Assembly: GCA_051294905.1 (NCBI GenBank)
Contig: CM119373.1
Span: 28,892,001-28,956,000, forward strand
Direction: 5' to 3'
DNA length: 64,000 nucleotides
Origin: Botryllus schlosseri
Lineage: Eukaryota
Below are positions 24,976-33,206 of the stretch, piece by piece. A model generated the notes under the pieces. That model saw only the letters and a list, made by a program, of their open reading frames with translations, did not search any database and was not told the DNA's origin. Every line of letters begins with the position of its first letter. The first letter of the stretch is position 1. Position numbers and translations under genes: made by a program.

Positions 24976-25118
24976 GCAAGATGAATGGAGAAAGAACGTT
25001 CAACTGTAGCAGCTATTGGCTGGCAACACTGAAGTTGTGCGTGCGTACACTGCTGGTGACACACCGTGTTGCTTCATTCTGACAATGGTATACATTGCAA
25101 TTTTTGTAAGAACCATGC

Positions 25119-25510
25119 TGTTAGCGCGCGCGTACGGCTTTGCAGTGCCTCGTGATATCTTGGTGTATTTAATTTAATTGTCTCGTGTTTGATCATCATC
25201 ATCATTATCAGTCTCGTTTTCTCTCCCTATATATTCAATTGCTAGACTCGTTTTCGTTGGTTACTTTGCTGAACAGACGGTTGGAAGATTCTTGGGATAA
25301 AGCATCGTTGTAAATCCTACGTTGTGCCTACTTTGTGCCTTATATTTATGCGTACTGCGTGCTGCCATTTGTGCTGTTCACGTTCTACTAAGCGTTAATT
25401 TGGATTAAAAGGTTGCTTGATTTACACCGGCCTTACATTCTACCGTCGAGATTAGACAGGCTTCTGCGCCTTAGTCGCCACACGCTCATTTCGTGTGCCG
25501 CGCAGAAACA
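25119..25510 (+). repeat. 5' LTR
   Basis: No difference from 31383-31774 found on visual comparison; TATATA at 25228, ATTAAA at 25404. Confidence 0.97.
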
Positions 25511-25685
25511 ATTTACAACGTCTGCAATTAACGTTTGCTTCATATTAGAAGCAAGACAAAGTAATCCTCTCCGTACTATTCAACGGAGATTTGGTTCGTT
25601 TCATCGTCAGAGTACTTTCGATTGCACCAATTTAGCAATCACCATTAACTGCCCTGATCTTTGAAGACAAACGATTAGTATCAGA

Positions 25686-28600
25686 ATGCCGCTGCAACAC
25701 TCTCCGACCGACGAGAAAGTTCGATTAGCTCCTTCGTTCAAGACTGTCGCCAAGATGACCGTTGAAGAGATGCGTATAGAGCTTGCTGCTCTCGAATTGC
25801 CAACCACTGGGAACAAAGCCGTGCTATCGGAAAGACTGAAGAAAGCTCGTGAGTGCAAGCCGGACAATTTGGAGACATCTAGAACGCAACCGCCAGATTC
25901 ACCGGTGCTAGATCAATCCGCGGCTTCGCCCGATCCATTTTCACTTCAGACCGAGAAGCCTAGCGACCTTATGATGATGTTTACACTAATGAAGCAACAG
26001 CAAGAGGCCGCGGAGAAAAGGTTCCTCATTCAGCAAGAAGCAGCCGAGAAGAGATTCTTCCTTCAGCTGGAAACAATGCGCCAAGAAGCGGACAAAGCCA
26101 GCTCTAACGGGGACTCCGATTTGCCCAGTGTCATCGGTAAGCGATTTAAGCGAATGAATAAAGATCTTCTCGAACTATTGCAGGCACTCGAACTGAAGTA
26201 CACAACTTCAAACTCTATCGAAGAAATTGAGGTGTTCGTGAAATCGGTCGAGACGTCCATGACGGATTTGAAATCCTACGTAGATGGCAAAATTGATCTA
26301 TTGGAAGATGGCGACTTGAAGACCGATATTATTAACGGTTTGAAAGATGCTACTCAAGTCTATTTAACCAACATTCCTCAAGCTAGGTCAAAGCTATCGA
26401 AATTGAAAGCGATTGACGAAGCTGACAGGACAGCTGGAAGTCTACCAATCGGTGTGAATCCGCCCTCATTTTATGGCGACATACTTTCTTTCCCGTCTTT
26501 CTGGGAGGCGTTTGAACCACTTGTTCATAACAACCAATCGGTCAGTAAATTTTACAAAATGACTTATTTGAAGGCTGCTATGAAGGGATCGGCGTCTGGT
26601 GTTCTAAACGGCTTTCCGTCTAATGCGACTAATTATGAGCCGGCGATTGCTGCGGTACTGCAACGATTCGGCAGGACGCAAGCAATTGTTCGCAGTCACA
26701 TTAAAGATCTGCTTGAAGGGAACCGGGTAGATTTCGAACTCGACAAAGTGCGAGGTATGCTAGACCGGGCTAATGCAAAGAGGTCAATACTGACTAAAAA
26801 TAACATCACCTGGGATCAAATGTTCACTCAGATATTGGAATCGCAGCTGCCTCAGAAATTACTCGAGCGTTGGATGCGTAAAATAAGCCCATTGATAGAG
26901 TCCAACGAAATAGCTTCGTCCGATCTAATGTTTGAGTTCATTGCAACAGAATTGGCGACTATGGACACTCTGAAGAGGTCTAGCTCCAAGCAATCGGAGA
27001 AGCAACCGAAGACGAAGCAGCAGACCTCCAACAACACCGATAAGTATTGTTCTGCTCAGTCTTTGGTAACTCAATCGATGTCGTCTCTCTGCGCATATTG
27101 CAGCAAGTCTCATCCGTTACTGGATTGTAGAGAATTTCTGAAATTGACCCCTGCTCAACGAATGTCTCGTTTGTTAATGAATCCGGGAAAGGTGTGTTTC
27201 AGGTGTCTCGCATCGCAGGGTGAGTCTGGACATCCTAAGCAGTTCTATCAGTGCAAAGCTCGGTGCGAGGTCGAAGGATGTGGGAAGGCTCATCACCGAC
27301 TACTGCATGTCACGGAATCGTCGAATGCGAAAACAATGGTATCCACTGCTAGGCGATCAGCAGCGTCGGACTCCGAAATTGATACCTTGCTCCCCACCGC
27401 ACTCGCGCAAATCTCAAACCAGGGTAAGACTATGCGTGTTCGCATTGCTTTCGATTCGTTGTCGGAGAAGTCCTTTATAACCCGGAACGCCGCTAATTAC
27501 TTGCAGCTACCGCCTATTCGAAGCCAACAAATGAACATTAGTGGATTTGGCGGTAGTTCAACCTCTAGTTCAATGGATCTAGTTACATTCAATCTGGAAC
27601 CATTACATTCAGAACCGAGAGGCTGTATTGAAGTTCAAGCGTTCGTTCAAGATGGTGTCATTTGCACGCCCTTAGATAACGTCACTTTACGTTGCGATCA
27701 GGTTAGACACCTTGACGGATTGCCGCTGGCTGACCCTCTCCCAAGGGACGACGGTACGGTAGATATACTATTGGGAGGACGTTATTATTTCTCGCTGATG
27801 CAAGGATCGGTTATTAGTCCTGAAATCCCCGAATCTGGACCATTTGCAATTGAAACTATGTTCGGTTGGGTATTGGCTGGACCATGTAGTCGTAATTCCT
27901 CAGTTAATCGTTCTTCTAATTGTTTACTTACCAGAAGCTCGTCAAAAGTACAGCGCTCTGAATTGGATCCTTGGCAACTGTTGGACAACAAACTCGAACG
28001 ATTCTGGAAGCAAGACTGCATTGGGCTTACAGATAAGGATTTGGTTCATACTTCTGACGAGGTTGATGCGATTGCACAATTCAATGATTCAGTGTCGTTC
28101 GATGGGGATAAGTATTGCGTGTCGTTACCATTTAAACGCGACGCAATAGAGTTGCAGCCAAATTTCGCGCAGGCATATTCCCGATTGCTAACAACAGAAA
28201 AAGTTCTAAAGAAAAACCCTGACAAATTTGCTAAATACGATCAGGCAATCATGGAATACGTGGACAACGGTTTCGCTCGGAAATTGTCGCAAGCGGAATT
28301 GGATAAGATTAGTACGATTACTCATTACTATGTCCCGCATCATCCGGTTTTTCGTGAAGCGAGTTGTTCCACGAAATTGCGAATTGTTTTCGACGCAAGC
28401 GCTAAAAATGGCTCTGGGTATTCGCTAAATGATTGCGTTTTGAAGGGCCCAAATTTGCTACCCGACATAGGAGCTGTGCTGCTACGATTTCGCACTCATA
28501 AAATTGCTTTGAGCGGTGACATTCGGAAAATGTTTTGCCAGACTGCTATTAATCCGGATCATCAGCGTTTCCAATTATACCTTTGGCGCAATTGCGAATC

Positions 28601-31388
28601 GCGTAGAGCGCCAGACGTCTACGTTATGGAGAGAGTAATGTTCGGAGTCTCGTCAAGTCCTTTTCTCGCTATTCAAACAATCCGCCATCATTCTAATACT
28701 GCGCCGATTATTGATAAATTTGGTCGCGACTTGGGCGATGAAATCGTTCGCAATATGTACGTCGATGACATTCATGTAGGTGGAAATAGCGTTGAAGAGG
28801 TTGTCTGCAAGCAAAAAAACTTGGTTGAGTTTTTCAATGACGGTGGATGGTCCTTGGTCAAATTTGCGTCCAATAATCGAGAAGTCATGGATTGCATTCC
28901 CGAGGAAGCTCGGTTACCGAATTGCGTTCTCGATCTCGATGACGCCAACAATGGCGAGGCCTCGTCTCTCGGTTTGAAATGGCACACGACGCAGGATGTC
29001 ATGTATTGTAATGTAAAACCCAAACTGCTTGAGCAGGATAAAATCGTGACAAAACGATCTATTTTGAGTAAGCTCAGTCAAATCTACGACGTGTTTGGAT
29101 TTTTTTCAGCATTCGTTATCACAGCAAAGATTTTGATGCAAGAATTGTGGAAACGAAAACTCGATTGGAACGATCCGGTTGACGACACACTCGCCAAGAA
29201 GTATCGACAATGGACCGACGAGCTGTCGCTTCTGGAGTCCATCAAAATTCCACGGTACCTTTTTTGTCGAATACGTTCTCCAAATTCCATGCAGCTTCAT
29301 GGTTTTGCTGATGCCTCCGAAAGTGCTTATGGGGCTGTAGTCTACATTAGAGCTGAAGATGACGTAGGCAATATTCAGACCCAGTATTTGATCGCTAAAA
29401 CGAGAGTGGCCCCATTGAAATCGACATCTGTTGCGCGACTCGAGCTAATGGCAGCCCACTGTCTAGCTAAATTAACTAGATACGTTTTGGATGCGCTGAG
29501 TTCTGAAATTTGTATTGATAGAGTCTATTTGTGGCTCGACTCCGAGATAGCTCTGGCATGGATTGCCAAGCCAAGTTCACATTGGAAAACGTTTGTGAGG
29601 AACAGAGTTCAGGAAATTCATGATCTCGTATCCCCACACGCTTGGAGACATTGTCCAGGCATCGAAAATCCAGCAGACTACCATAGCCGCGGCATGGCGC
29701 TTCAGGAGTTGAAGAGTTGTTCGGCCTATTGGCACGGACCGGGCTGGCTGAGGTCTGAAGAGTCGGACTGGCCTGTGAAATCGCACCTAGAACAATCGAA
29801 TCCGCAAGTCGACACAGAAACCGCAACTCCTCGCGTGTTGGTGAACATCACACAGCCACCAGTTCCTTTTTATGTTGATCGCTACGGTAACTATTCCAAA
29901 ATTGTTCGTATTACAGCGAGAATTTTGCGTTGGCGGCATCGTGATTACATGAAAATGGACCCAGAGTGCAACAATCGATTCGTTGGACCAAATGAGTTCA
30001 GGAAGGTGGAATACTTCCTTTTACGTCAGATTCAACGCTCAAGATTTAGCAGCGAATTCGAAAATCTCGACAAAGGTAAGAATGTGTCGAATAAATCAAA
30101 AATTAAAGACATGGATCCCAGAGTAGACCTCGAAAATAAGCTAATCGTTGCCGGTGATCGGTTGAGTTTGTGTGATTTGCCAGAGTTCACGAGTTCTCCG
30201 ATTATTCTTCCCGCCAAGGAGCCGTTAGTGGAAAAACTCATTCTACATGTCCACGAAAGCAACTCTCATTCTCCTCAGGACACAACCATCGCTATTCTTC
30301 GTGAGCGCTTCCTTATTATTCATATCAGGAGCGAGGTAAGAAGGGGATTGCGAAATTGTATCGTTTGTCGACATTGGAACACGAAACCACTCCAACAGAA
30401 AATGGGTATTCTTCCAAAGGAACGCATTTGCGCTTCTCCGGCATTTTCTGAAGTCGGGTTGGATTTCACGGGGCCAATTTATATTGAAGTAGGTGACGAC
30501 GCAATGCAAAAGGCGTATATTTGTTTGTTCACTTGCCCCCACAGTAGAATGATTCATTTGGAATTGACCAACGATATGTCCACGGAGGAATTCATCGGTG
30601 CTCTGCAACGAATGATAAACAGGCGTGGCTGGTGTCGAGAGATTATATGCGACAATCAACTGACTTTCAAAAAGGCTGAACGTATAATTCAGATTTCGAC
30701 ACGCGCGTCCTTCAAAAAGCGGTCAGACAATGAAGCTCTACAAAAATTCCTTACCGACAACGGGATAACGTGGAAATACATTGCCGAACGCGCTCCACAC
30801 CGCGGTGCCTTTTACGAGAGGATGAACAGATCCATTAAAGAACCTCTCAGAAAGATTCTGGGTAAGGCAAAGTTGAACTTCACTGAACTATACACCATTT
30901 TGACAGATATCGAGTGTGCGATGAACCAGCGGCCGTTGACGTATCTCGGTTCCGATCCGAGAAACCCACAAGCAATCACTCCAGCTCATTTGGCAATTGG
31001 TCGGCCACTGCGACATATCCCGAATTTTCCGTCCAAAGCGAGTGTCAACGTCTCGAAGCGATTTCGCTATCTCCAAACGCTGTTGCGGCATTTCTGGGCG
31101 AGATGGTCGAAGGAATATCTCCCGACGTTGATCAAGAGAAAGAAATGGGCTTTCGAACATTCTGTTCCAAACGTCGGAGACATTTGTTTAATCGCAGACG
31201 ACGGATACGCGCGCTCGAATTGGAAGGTCGGCAGAATCGTGCATGCTTTCAAGGGCAAAGATAGCCTCGTGAGAACATTCAAATTGAAAACCGCTCGCGG
31301 ATATCTTACGCGACCTATACAAAAACTCCATTTACTGGAGAAAGACTATTCGGTTGACTATGACCAGTCAAAGGGGGGTGGATGTTAG
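25686..31388 (+). CDS. BEL/Pao Gag-Pol polyprotein, 1900 aa (SAP-like, DUF1759-like Gag, Cys-His boxes, aspartic protease, RT, RNase H, integrase, DUF5641-like tail)
   Basis: PPSFYGDILSFPSFWEAF; CAYCSKSHPLLDC / CFRC..H / CEVEGCGKAHHRLLH; KLRIVFDASAK; YVDD; LHGFADASESAYG; GLDFTGP / CDN / FYERMNRSIK; FWARWSKEYL. Order PR-RT-RH-IN. Confidence 0.97.
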   Translation: MPLQHSPTDEKVRLAPSFKTVAKMTVEEMRIELAALELPTTGNKAVLSERLKKARECKPDNLETSRTQPPDSPVLDQSAASPDPFSLQTEKPSDLMMMFTLMKQQQEAAEKRFLIQQEAAEKRFFLQLETMRQEADKASSNGDSDLPSVIGKRFKRMNKDLLELLQALELKYTTSNSIEEIEVFVKSVETSMTDLKSYVDGKIDLLEDGDLKTDIINGLKDATQVYLTNIPQARSKLSKLKAIDEADRTAGSLPIGVNPPSFYGDILSFPSFWEAFEPLVHNNQSVSKFYKMTYLKAAMKGSASGVLNGFPSNATNYEPAIAAVLQRFGRTQAIVRSHIKDLLEGNRVDFELDKVRGMLDRANAKRSILTKNNITWDQMFTQILESQLPQKLLERWMRKISPLIESNEIASSDLMFEFIATELATMDTLKRSSSKQSEKQPKTKQQTSNNTDKYCSAQSLVTQSMSSLCAYCSKSHPLLDCREFLKLTPAQRMSRLLMNPGKVCFRCLASQGESGHPKQFYQCKARCEVEGCGKAHHRLLHVTESSNAKTMVSTARRSAASDSEIDTLLPTALAQISNQGKTMRVRIAFDSLSEKSFITRNAANYLQLPPIRSQQMNISGFGGSSTSSSMDLVTFNLEPLHSEPRGCIEVQAFVQDGVICTPLDNVTLRCDQVRHLDGLPLADPLPRDDGTVDILLGGRYYFSLMQGSVISPEIPESGPFAIETMFGWVLAGPCSRNSSVNRSSNCLLTRSSSKVQRSELDPWQLLDNKLERFWKQDCIGLTDKDLVHTSDEVDAIAQFNDSVSFDGDKYCVSLPFKRDAIELQPNFAQAYSRLLTTEKVLKKNPDKFAKYDQAIMEYVDNGFARKLSQAELDKISTITHYYVPHHPVFREASCSTKLRIVFDASAKNGSGYSLNDCVLKGPNLLPDIGAVLLRFRTHKIALSGDIRKMFCQTAINPDHQRFQLYLWRNCESRRAPDVYVMERVMFGVSSSPFLAIQTIRHHSNTAPIIDKFGRDLGDEIVRNMYVDDIHVGGNSVEEVVCKQKNLVEFFNDGGWSLVKFASNNREVMDCIPEEARLPNCVLDLDDANNGEASSLGLKWHTTQDVMYCNVKPKLLEQDKIVTKRSILSKLSQIYDVFGFFSAFVITAKILMQELWKRKLDWNDPVDDTLAKKYRQWTDELSLLESIKIPRYLFCRIRSPNSMQLHGFADASESAYGAVVYIRAEDDVGNIQTQYLIAKTRVAPLKSTSVARLELMAAHCLAKLTRYVLDALSSEICIDRVYLWLDSEIALAWIAKPSSHWKTFVRNRVQEIHDLVSPHAWRHCPGIENPADYHSRGMALQELKSCSAYWHGPGWLRSEESDWPVKSHLEQSNPQVDTETATPRVLVNITQPPVPFYVDRYGNYSKIVRITARILRWRHRDYMKMDPECNNRFVGPNEFRKVEYFLLRQIQRSRFSSEFENLDKGKNVSNKSKIKDMDPRVDLENKLIVAGDRLSLCDLPEFTSSPIILPAKEPLVEKLILHVHESNSHSPQDTTIAILRERFLIIHIRSEVRRGLRNCIVCRHWNTKPLQQKMGILPKERICASPAFSEVGLDFTGPIYIEVGDDAMQKAYICLFTCPHSRMIHLELTNDMSTEEFIGALQRMINRRGWCREIICDNQLTFKKAERIIQISTRASFKKRSDNEALQKFLTDNGITWKYIAERAPHRGAFYERMNRSIKEPLRKILGKAKLNFTELYTILTDIECAMNQRPLTYLGSDPRNPQAITPAHLAIGRPLRHIPNFPSKASVNVSKRFRYLQTLLRHFWARWSKEYLPTLIKRKKWAFEHSVPNVGDICLIADDGYARSNWKVGRIVHAFKGKDSLVRTFKLKTARGYLTRPIQKLHLLEKDYSVDYDQSKGGGC
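31370..31382 (+). promoter_or_regulatory. Polypurine tract
   Basis: aaaggggggtgga directly abuts the 3' LTR. Confidence 0.85.
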
Positions 31389-31774
31389 CGCGCGCGTACG
31401 GCTTTGCAGTGCCTCGTGATATCTTGGTGTATTTAATTTAATTGTCTCGTGTTTGATCATCATCATCATTATCAGTCTCGTTTTCTCTCCCTATATATTC
31501 AATTGCTAGACTCGTTTTCGTTGGTTACTTTGCTGAACAGACGGTTGGAAGATTCTTGGGATAAAGCATCGTTGTAAATCCTACGTTGTGCCTACTTTGT
31601 GCCTTATATTTATGCGTACTGCGTGCTGCCATTTGTGCTGTTCACGTTCTACTAAGCGTTAATTTGGATTAAAAGGTTGCTTGATTTACACCGGCCTTAC
31701 ATTCTACCGTCGAGATTAGACAGGCTTCTGCGCCTTAGTCGCCACACGCTCATTTCGTGTGCCGCGCAGAAACA
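31383..31774 (+). repeat. 3' LTR
   Basis: Identical to the 5' LTR; followed by TSD catgc. The ORF stop (TAG 31386-31388) lies inside it. Confidence 0.97.
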
Positions 31775-33206
31775 CATGCAATGCCCACGCAGTCTTGCTT
31801 CACTTAGAATATTTCGGTACGCTGAGCATAACACCGTGTCAACCTATTTGTTTCATTTGACTGTTTATGATTCACAACGAGCAGACAATGCGCAGTCTGC
31901 CACGGTACGCGTATAAAGTAGGCTACAAACTGTAAAATGTCAAACGATAAGTTCACCGATTGCGCAAAATCTACGATACAAATAAAATGCAGGTTGCGAA
32001 AAATTTTGTCAATTTTGACATTTTTTGACCTAACGCTAAAATTTTGACCTTATTTTGACTTTTTTTGACATATCAAAAAAAATCGCCCTAGATATCACCA
32101 AACAGAGGTATAAAAGTGTTCTTCGCAATCAGACATGGGGTGATTACTTCACGAATGTAATCGATTGCGATTACGATTACTTGTGAATACCGCGATTACG
32201 ATTACGATTACGATTACAGCCAAATCAGGAAGTAGTCGATTACGATTACGATTACTTTCCAAAAGTAATCACGATTACTCACGATTACATTTGTTTTGCT
32301 TCTTAGAACTAATTTCAGAAGAGATATTAAAAGACAATATAAATAAGGCTTGCGATGAAAAGGTCTAATGAGATAAAAACTTTCTTTATTAATCATACGT
32401 GATTCGCTTATTACGTCATAATGCACCCATTGCCCACCTTTATGCAGGACTATTCGTCGCACCAAACGATTTGCATTCTTGCCAGGTTCGTAACTGCCAC
32501 ACCCCAAACTCTCCAATAGGACTGGGAGCGAGCTCTAAGGGGACTCAAAAGCATTTCGTAAATCAACATATTTTCAAGAGAGTTAATTAACTTGAGAATT
32601 TTCTTCGAGCTTCGGGATTTAATGTCTCTTAATAGCTTGATTTTGAAATGCGTACCTCTCCCCCTCAAGAAAAAAAGCATGCATAATTTATAGGAATAGG
32701 CATTTCGGTGTCGGTCATTACCCCGCCACGACACCAAAAGACGCATGCAATTTCGGCCAACATGCAACTCCACAAAGTGTGCTACCAAATAATGACCTTG
32801 GCCAAAACGTTGGGTATGTGTCCATTGTCAGTAGCCGCGCTCTGTGGACGTGGCAAATAGTCCGGTCCTTCCAATCTGAGCCCTAACAATGCAAATGCCA
32901 CCCGGGGCACTCACAGAGGAATGAAGACATCACAATTTGTGTGTGCGTCTCACGAAAGTTTTTATTTTAGTCTGCTACGTTAGGGCGACTACAGAATCTT
33001 TTGAATATATAAAAGACGGGAGTTCACGAATTAACAACATACAATAATGAAAATATAACAACATACCAGATGCTATAATTATGAATTACTTGCCCCCAGC
33101 TCTACCGGTAAATCTGAATGAATAGCAATATAATGCAATTACCAATATTATTGACGAAATTCAGTCATCAACTTGAAAACTGACCCCCCTATGGGGCCCC
33201 AATACC

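What the first reader, a model, noticed from the sequence alone, without database searches (positions are those of the whole stretch)
25306..25520. BEL/Pao element with no tRNA PBS but a perfect self-complementary one: candidate self-priming
Seen: the bases right after the 5' LTR are atttacaacg (25511-25520), with no TGG complementary to tRNA CCA. Their exact reverse complement, cgttgtaaat, lies inside the LTR at 25306-25315, between the TATA-like box (25228) and ATTAAA (25404). Pairing would put the primer 3' end flush with the LTR boundary. Established: fission-yeast Tf1 and related Ty3/gypsy chromoviruses prime from their own 5' end after RNase H cleavage. I know of no such report for BEL/Pao, which normally use tRNA. 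Inference: independent evolution of self-priming. Caveats: the match is only 10 bp, and the TATA position predicts a start nearer 25260 than 25306.
Basis: partly seen in the sequence, partly recalled or inferred. Interest (0 to 1): 0.8.

Follow-up and report, generated by a model that had tools for sequence, protein, structure and literature searches.

The report
Self-complementary primer site in BEL/Pao retrotransposon
A young, intact BEL/Pao retrotransposon has no tRNA-type primer site; the bases right after its 5' LTR pair with a segment inside the LTR, and nine related lineages keep this pairing with different sequences, so this clade probably primes its own reverse transcription, as fission-yeast Tf1 does.

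Summary
The element spans window 25119-31774. Its two 392-bp LTRs are identical, the target-site duplication is CATGC, and one ORF of 1900 aa carries Pao-type domains. The 10 bases after the 5' LTR (25511-25520) are the exact reverse complement of LTR bases 25306-25315, and the pairing ends flush with the LTR end (11 of 20000 shuffles do as well).

The pairing is conserved by covariation.
- A diverged subfamily in the same genome changed two positions on both sides and still pairs perfectly (10-11 bp).
- Seven relatives from other assemblies (42-59% identity over the RT-to-integrase part of Pol) have different sequences that are again flush and complementary over 8-16 nt.
- An eighth relative pairs over 9 nt, one base off the LTR end.
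- In 9 lineages the first 8 pairs are all Watson-Crick, and 6 of those 8 positions show two or more pair types.

More distant BEL/Pao elements (Bombyx and a marine contig) have ordinary TGG-type tRNA sites and no self-complement. Most members also have a U5 hairpin 1-3 nt before the LTR end, as Tf1 and retroviruses do.

Best reading: Tf1-like self-priming in one BEL/Pao clade. The transcription start, the RNA cleavage and actual priming are not shown. I found no earlier report for BEL/Pao, and the ICTV profile describes the family as tRNA-primed. Verdict: new variant of a known kind.

The parts
25114..25118 (+). target-site duplication CATGC, 5' copy
25119..25510 (+). 5' LTR, 392 bp, TGT...ACA, 100% identical to the 3' LTR
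25228..25235 (+). TATA-like box; would predict a start near 25258-25263 (TTACTTT initiator-like, a conserved block)
   Evidence: function inferred
25306..25315 (+). candidate self-primer CGTTGTAAAT (T25305 adds an 11th pair in copies whose 11th PBS base is A); its 3' end would pair with the first base after the LTR
25404..25409 (+). ATTAAA, likely poly(A) signal; sense-strand 3'-biased scRNA depth falls to about 2 in the first bin after it and below 1 in the next
   Evidence: site not mapped exactly
25462..25507 (+). U5 terminal hairpin (arms TTCTGCGC / GCGCAGAA) ending 3 nt before the LTR end; like a U5-IR stem-loop
   Evidence: compensatory variants in relatives
25511..25520 (+). primer-binding site ATTTACAACG, flush with the LTR end, no tRNA-type TGG
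25527..25539 (+). degenerate second copy of the PBS unit (tandem with 25511-25526); in subfamily B this copy reads ATTTACAACG
   Evidence: meaning unknown
25686..31388 (+). single gag-pol ORF, 1900 aa, uninterrupted
31370..31382 (+). polypurine tract AAAGGGGGGTGGA
31383..31774 (+). 3' LTR (second copy of the 10-mer at 31570-31579)
31775..31779 (+). target-site duplication CATGC, 3' copy

Best explanation
This BEL/Pao clade starts minus-strand DNA synthesis from its own RNA rather than from a host tRNA. A 9-16 nt segment of the LTR-derived 5' untranslated region (25306-25315 here) folds back onto the sequence directly 3' of U5 (25511-25520). A U5 hairpin sits beside the duplex. The RNA is cut at the 3' end of the paired LTR segment, presumably by the element's RNase H as in Tf1. 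The new 3'-OH is then extended into U5 and R. Later, plus-strand strong-stop synthesis copies the RNA primer back into DNA, so any change in the LTR segment is written into the PBS. That would explain why the two always match. Shown here: the pairing, its flush geometry, its covariation, the absence of a tRNA-type site, and transcription of the family. Inferred: the cleavage, the priming itself, and the position of the transcription start.
For: 1. Exact 10-nt complement flush with the LTR end; 11 of 20000 shuffles do as well.
2. Same genome, subfamily B (LTR about 75% identical): the LTR reads TGTTATAAAT and the PBS reads ATTTATAACA(A). That is two double (compensatory) changes and 10-11 bp perfect; 6 of 20000 shuffles do as well.
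3. Relatives from other assemblies have different sequences that are again flush. Lengths: L110 16 nt, L103 15, L108 14, L113 13 (its LTR end was found by scan and falls at ...AACA), L109 12, L114 9, L105 8 plus 7 across a 1-nt bulge, and L104 9 nt at offset 1. Shuffles reaching the observed length: 0 of 20000 for L110, L103, L108 and L113 (the L113 figure is not comparable, see the Against line); 5 of 20000 for L109; 123 of 20000 for L114.
4. Pairs 1-8 are Watson-Crick in 9 of 9 lineages, and 6 of those 8 positions have at least 2 pair types.
5. All of these lineages fall in one clade with 100/100 support. The Bombyx relative in the sister clade has a TGG-type PBS and only a 5-nt self-match. 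A marine contig, L119, which was not placed in the tree, also has a TGG-type PBS.
6. 30 of 33 A-type LTR copies in the genome keep the 10-mer. Its mean identity is 0.965 against 0.886 for the whole LTR.
7. A U5 hairpin lies 1-3 nt before the LTR end in most members, with compensatory arms: CUGCGC/GCGCAG, CUGUGC/GCACAG and UUCAAAG/CUUUGAA. When the RNA is taken from 25304, both the MFE and the centroid fold pair the 10-mer with the PBS.
8. No tRNA-like context for either 10-mer in the genome: hit counts equal the reversed-pattern controls and ARAGORN finds no tRNA. No Rfam family matches.
9. The family has several uninterrupted 1900-1970 aa ORFs and sense-strand RNA reads, so it needs some primer.
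Against: The transcription start is unknown. The TATA-like box predicts a start about 45 nt upstream of the 10-mer, and with that start the MFE fold uses a different pairing.

The position of the LTR segment varies (LTR positions 78 to 531), and so does its order relative to a conserved TATTTGAATAAG-like block. In L105 it lies about 95 nt downstream of an AATAAG. If that hexamer is the poly(A) signal, the segment would be in U5, and a Tf1-style first strand transfer would fail.

L104 is imperfect. The Patella member of the clade shows no complement. L113's LTR end was chosen by the scan itself, so its shuffle figure is not comparable with the others.

The second flanking duplex of the Tf1 'pretzel' was not confirmed: the 8-bp candidate is not kept in subfamily B.

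Only 6 host tRNA isoacceptor types could be sampled.

No cleavage product or primer-linked cDNA was observed.
Confidence: 0.72

Rival explanations
1. The LTR:PBS duplex is only a structural stem of the 5' UTR (packaging, dimerisation, translation control, or presentation of the initiation site). The real primer would be an unidentified host RNA.
For: Retroviruses and Ty elements have conserved long-range stems around the PBS, so covariation alone shows pairing and not priming. The start site is unresolved, and the host tRNA sampling was incomplete.
Against: The duplex ends exactly at the U5 boundary in 9 of 10 lineages, which priming requires and a stem does not. There is no TGG or other conserved host-RNA-like site in the leader. 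The PBS sequences differ between lineages, so a single conserved host primer cannot fit them. No tRNA context was found for either 10-mer.
Confidence: 0.13
2. The pairing acts between the two ends of the RNA, or between two co-packaged RNAs. The copy of the LTR segment in the 3' U3/R pairs with the 5' PBS, giving cyclisation as in Ty1 or priming in trans.
For: The segment is certainly present in the 3' LTR part of the transcript: sense reads cover U3 and R. Its variable position in the LTR fits this reading at least as well as a 5'-terminal primer.
Against: It needs a cut far from any RNA end. Cyclisation alone gives no reason for the flush geometry. When the RNA starts near the segment, the local fold pairs it in cis.
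Confidence: 0.1
3. The match is a chance inverted repeat.
For: It is only 10 nt in an AT-rich LTR.
Against: Shuffle frequency is about 5e-4 for this copy alone, and the feature recurs with different sequences in 8 further lineages.
Confidence: 0.01

Closest known systems
Tf1/sushi group of Ty3/gypsy chromoviruses (Tf1, Tf2, Tj1, sushi-ichi; Tcn1 clade in plants)
   Same: The PBS lies next to the 5' LTR, is about 11 nt long, and is complementary to the element's own LTR-derived 5' UTR rather than to a tRNA. A U5 stem-loop lies beside the duplex. The LTR ends in CA (PMC10085805, PMC4600332, PMC6317226).
   Different: It belongs to a different superfamily: Pao-type pol domains, no chromodomain, and DUF1759 gag. 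In Tf1 the primer is the first 11 nt of the mRNA, whereas here the start is unknown and the TATA-like box suggests the segment may be internal. Duplex length varies from 9 to 16 nt. The full three-duplex 'pretzel' is not shown. Cleavage and priming are untested.
Ty1/copia TAR lineage (Houba, Osr-1), where self-priming is predicted
   Same: It is a sequence-based prediction of self-priming outside Ty3/gypsy (PMC6317226).
   Different: It is a plant copia lineage, unrelated in pol, and also without experimental proof.
Canonical BEL/Pao (Belpaoviridae, Semotivirus)
   Same: Gene content, LTR termini, 5-bp TSD and PPT.
   Different: The ICTV profile describes an 18-nt PBS complementary to the 3' end of tRNA-Arg or tRNA-Gly, and tRNA-primed replication (PMC8742986). 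This clade has neither. The more distant Bombyx and marine relatives do have TGG-type sites.

Membership tests
Self-primed LTR retrotransposons (Tf1-type mechanism) | PBS directly 3' of the 5' LTR is complementary to a segment of the element's own LTR/5' UTR | tested here: met
   10 nt, flush with the LTR end
Self-primed LTR retrotransposons (Tf1-type mechanism) | Complementarity is kept among relatives while the sequences change | tested here: met
   Subfamily B plus 8 other lineages
Self-primed LTR retrotransposons (Tf1-type mechanism) | The self-primer is the first nucleotides of the mRNA | tested here: inconclusive
   The 3'-biased scRNA reads give no start. Motif-based predictions are 25210, about 25263 or about 25304.
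Self-primed LTR retrotransposons (Tf1-type mechanism) | No complementarity to a host tRNA | tested here: inconclusive
   There is no TGG. Pattern searches for the 10-mers in a tRNA context are at control level. Only 6 isoacceptor types were sampled directly.
Self-primed LTR retrotransposons (Tf1-type mechanism) | Flanking duplexes (U5-IR-like stem; 'pretzel') | tested here: inconclusive
   The U5 hairpin is present with compensatory arms. The second duplex is not conserved.
Self-primed LTR retrotransposons (Tf1-type mechanism) | RNase H-dependent cleavage of the RNA duplex, and the primer found on strong-stop DNA | not testable with these tools
   Needs biochemistry
Tf1/sushi chromoviruses (phylogenetic group) | Ty3/gypsy pol with an integrase chromodomain | tested here: not met
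   Pfam shows Pao-type domains only
BEL/Pao (Belpaoviridae) | Pao-type pol (Peptidase_A17, DUF5641), DUF1759 gag, LTRs, PPT, 4-6 bp TSD | tested here: met
   tree
BEL/Pao (Belpaoviridae) | 18-nt PBS complementary to the 3' end of host tRNA-Arg or tRNA-Gly (ICTV profile) | tested here: not met
   No TGG-type site in the leader. Distant relatives have one.

The most novel reading that the evidence does not exclude
Self-priming arose independently in a third LTR-retrotransposon superfamily, and it works differently from Tf1. The primer would be an internal segment of R or U5 rather than the capped 5' end. That would need a defined endonucleolytic cut and would leave a primer with a 5' tail. The segment can move within the LTR during evolution because reverse transcription rewrites the PBS from the primer in every cycle. 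The tandem PBS copies in the leaders would be footprints of that process.
Probability: 0.3. Interest if true: 0.8.

Novelty: new variant of a known kind. Interest (0 to 1): 0.68.

Why it matters
BEL/Pao elements (Belpaoviridae) are described as tRNA-primed, and their replication is almost unstudied. A whole clade with a covarying self-complementary primer site would make self-priming a recurrent solution in all three LTR-retrotransposon superfamilies. That bears on the old question of whether hairpin or self priming preceded tRNA priming (PMC3601003). It also has a practical side. LTR annotation tools that require a tRNA-type PBS will score these active elements as lacking a PBS. Host defences that act through tRNA fragments aimed at the PBS would not see them either; that last point is my inference.

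Tried and rejected
- **Transcription start from reads.** The single read-laying run used 3'-biased single-cell runs. It shows sense transcription and a fall in depth after ATTAAA, but no 5' ends. Run X21, from another organism, laid nothing.
- **Host tRNA repertoire.** The Rfam tRNA search of the genome returned mostly one tRNA-Lys-like array. Only 6 isoacceptor types were recovered and none is complementary, so this is a weak test.
- **L106.** The LTR is not in the contig, and the 11-nt complement found by scan is probably inside the leader, so it is uninformative.
- **L107.** A chimeric or truncated contig; dropped.
- **Third 'pretzel' duplex.** The window candidate (CGTTAATT 25393-25400 with AATTAACG 25526-25533) is not kept in subfamily B and is treated as chance.
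- **JGI metagenome relatives.** These are distant (27-39%) and mostly collapsed contigs. They served only as negative controls.
- **Literature.** No paper linking self-priming with BEL/Pao was found. The BEL/Pao survey PMC3118150 does not discuss the PBS at all. The original Tf1 papers are not held.
- **Consensus lines.** The consensus lines that the alignment tools print by default were not used.

Full report
**The element.** Window 25119-31774 is a complete LTR retrotransposon. The two LTRs (25119-25510 and 31383-31774) are 392 bp, 100% identical, and run TGT...ACA. CATGC flanks both ends as the target-site duplication. A polypurine tract, AAAGGGGGGTGGA, abuts the 3' LTR. One uninterrupted ORF of 1900 aa (25686-31388) carries SAP, DUF1759 (gag), Peptidase_A17 (Pao; 1.5e-47), Integrase_H2C2, rve and DUF5641. 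This is a young BEL/Pao element. The host genome is 495 Mb and holds dozens of copies and solo LTRs at 75-100% identity. Several copies have uninterrupted ORFs of 1900-1970 aa.

**The observation.** The ten bases after the 5' LTR are ATTTACAACG (25511-25520). There is no TGG in the first ~60 nt of the leader. The exact reverse complement, CGTTGTAAAT, is at 25306-25315 (LTR positions 188-197). The pairing cannot be extended into the LTR end, because the next pair would be C:A, so the 3' end of the LTR segment pairs with the first base after U5. No other anchored match in the LTR exceeds 3 nt. Only 11 of 20000 shuffles of the LTR give a flush match of 10 nt or more.

**Covariation inside the genome.** Thirteen fetched loci carry an LTR followed by the leader; two of them (L005, L006) are duplicates of one element.
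- The seven A-type copies other than L005/L006 and L035 keep the 10-bp duplex perfect.
- In five A-type loci the 11th PBS base is A and pairs with T25305, giving 11 bp; three of these (L005, L006, L035) also carry one of the single changes described below.
- Subfamily B (L031-L033) has an LTR only about 75% identical, although its pol is about 96% identical in protein. It has TGTTATAAAT in the LTR and ATTTATAACA(A) after it. Two positions changed on both sides and the duplex stays perfect at 10-11 bp (6 of 20000 shuffles).
- The decayed copies L034 and L035 each have one mismatch.
- The G in the 5' LTR of L005/L006, which makes a G:U pair, is absent from the 3' LTR of L006's element (L015), so it probably arose after insertion.
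- Among 33 A-type LTR copies, 30 keep the 10-mer. Its mean identity to the window copy is 0.965 against 0.886 for the LTR as a whole, which places it in the top 12% of 10-nt windows.

**Relatives elsewhere.** A protein search found relatives at 42-59% identity over the RT-to-integrase part of Pol (residues 900-1500), and their contigs were fetched. Where LTR ends could be set from two LTR copies, from the TSD, or by homology of the conserved LTR end (...CAGAAACA), the bases after the 5' LTR are again the exact complement of an LTR-internal segment and again flush:

| Locus | Flush complement |
|---|---|
| L110 | 16 nt |
| L103 | 15 nt |
| L108 | 14 nt |
| L109 | 12 nt |
| L114 | 9 nt |
| L105 | 8 nt, then 7 more across a one-base bulge in a T run |
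| L113 | 13 nt; LTR end found by scanning, and the best match falls exactly after ...AACA |
| L104 | 9 nt, one base off the LTR end; a decayed copy |

The sequences differ between lineages. Counting pairs back from the flush end, pairs 1-8 are Watson-Crick in all nine lineages, and six of those eight positions show two to four pair types. Shuffle frequencies are 0 of 20000 for the four longest matches (L113 is not comparable, because its end was chosen by the scan), 5 of 20000 for L109 and 123 of 20000 for L114.

**Controls and phylogeny.** The Bombyx relative (36% identity) has a TGG-type site 6 nt after its LTR and only a 5-nt self-match. A marine-metagenome element, L119, has a TGG-type site 1 nt after its LTR. 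Other distant contigs show only 4-8 nt. In a maximum-likelihood tree of Pol residues 900-1500 (RT to integrase), all lineages with the self-complement fall in one clade with 100/100 support, separate from the clade holding the Bombyx element (L119 was not placed in the tree). The Patella member of that clade shows neither a self-complement nor a TGG site, and its 5' LTR is interrupted by an insertion.

**Neighbouring RNA structure.** In most members a hairpin closes 1-3 nt before the LTR end. Its arms differ in a compensatory way: CUGCGC/GCGCAG here, CUGUGC/GCACAG in L103, L108 and L110, and UUCAAAG/CUUUGAA in L105. Folding the RNA from 25304 to 25560 gives the 10-mer:PBS duplex in both the MFE and the centroid structure, with this hairpin beside it. 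Folding from 25263 gives a different MFE. That alternative rests on an 8-bp match which subfamily B does not keep.

**Is a host RNA the primer?**
- ARAGORN finds no tRNA in the window.
- Genome-wide patterns that place either 10-mer upstream of a T-loop, or at an acceptor 3' end, occur no more often than reversed-pattern controls. The five A-type hits fetched are not tRNAs by ARAGORN, and none of the matched strings looks like one.
- No Rfam family matches the LTR or leader.
- The direct sample of host tRNAs was poor: only six isoacceptor types.

The strongest argument is comparative. The PBS differs between lineages and each time matches the lineage's own LTR, which a fixed host RNA cannot explain.

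**Transcription.** Single-cell RNA reads of the same species lie on the sense strand over U3 and R. Depth peaks at 25256-25306, falls through the bin that ends at ATTAAA (25404-25409) to about 2 in the next bin, and drops below 1 before the LTR end. This fits 3'-end reads from the 3' LTR and a poly(A) site soon after ATTAAA. These reads give no 5' ends. Most are 95-99% identical to the window, so they come from sister copies.

Candidate start sites from motifs and conservation are TCAGTC at 25208, TTACTTT at 25261 (35 nt after the TATA-like box), and the CA at 25303-25304.

Across relatives, the LTR segment lies at LTR positions 78 to 531, and its order relative to a conserved TATTTGAATAAG-like block varies. 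So the segment is not positionally homologous, and its place in U3, R or U5 is unresolved. In L105 it lies downstream of an AATAAG, which would be a problem for a Tf1-style strand transfer if that hexamer is the poly(A) signal.

**Mechanism.** The best reading is self-priming of the Tf1 type. The LTR-derived segment of the genomic RNA folds onto the PBS, is cut at its 3' end, and is extended into U5. Plus-strand strong-stop synthesis then copies the RNA primer, which rewrites the PBS from the LTR segment in each cycle. That gives a mechanistic reason for the perfect covariation. The flush geometry, the absence of a tRNA site in a family that has uninterrupted ORFs and is transcribed, and the adjacent U5 hairpin all fit. 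The cleavage, the priming and the start site are inferred and not shown.

The main rival is a purely structural stem with an unknown primer. It does not explain the flush boundary or the lineage-specific PBS sequences. A variant with pairing between the two RNA ends, or between two RNAs, remains possible.

**Comparison with the literature.**
- Self-priming was demonstrated for Tf1 and is inferred for the Tf1/sushi group and Tj1. [quoted passage not shown]
- It is predicted for the plant Tcn1 (gypsy) and TAR (copia) lineages (PMC6317226).
- For Belpaoviridae, the ICTV profile states an 18-nt PBS complementary to tRNA-Arg or tRNA-Gly and tRNA-primed replication (PMC8742986).
- The BEL/Pao survey does not treat the PBS (PMC3118150).
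- Full-text searches combining self-priming with Pao, Bel-Pao, Belpaoviridae or Semotivirus found no such report. Subscription-journal papers are not covered.

I therefore rate this as a new variant of a known kind: the known mechanism class, in a superfamily where it has not been described, supported by covariation across a clade but not by experiment.

Noticed in passing
window 25001-25102: A short segment just 5' of the element has very high depth in one run's contigs (up to about 12400). It also has single-cell RNA reads on both strands, with loose ends at 25041-25054 and 25084-25089. It looks like an abundant short repeat.
   Followed up: no
window 25511-25539; L031-L034 leaders; L104:9817-10045: The PBS unit is tandemly repeated in the leaders. 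The window has two 13-16 nt copies. In subfamily B the second copy is the A-type PBS, ATTTACAACG. L104 has five 45-nt units, each starting with the LTR-end ACA plus the PBS. These may be footprints of strand-transfer slippage.
   Followed up: partly
L032 (G000 C3:20474567-20476100) and row C3:20478334: Subfamily B has a pol about 96% identical in protein to the window element, but its LTR and leader are only about 75% identical. Either the LTR evolves fast or it was exchanged.
   Followed up: no
L074, L075 (G000 C3:34486000-34514000): A dense array of tRNA-Lys(UUU)-like genes; across all fetched tRNA loci there are 34 distinct tRNA-Lys(UUU)-like sequences. They dominate the best Rfam tRNA hits of the genome.
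   Followed up: no
L112:5864-5890; L119:2120-2140: More distant BEL/Pao elements (Bombyx mori and a marine metagenome) have TGG-type primer sites, 6 and 1 nt after the LTR. The Bombyx site reads like a T-loop followed directly by GGACCA, which is not a standard tRNA 3' end.
   Followed up: no
window 25746-25850: SAP domain at the Gag N-terminus (Pfam E 1.5e-7). It is also present in relatives P0004 and P0008 and in the gag ORF upstream of P0002 in L108.
   Followed up: partly
L111:3673-5936: In the Patella relative, the 5' LTR appears to be split by a 1.47-kb insertion, and satellite-like repeats flank the element. It has neither a self-complement nor a TGG site.
   Followed up: partly
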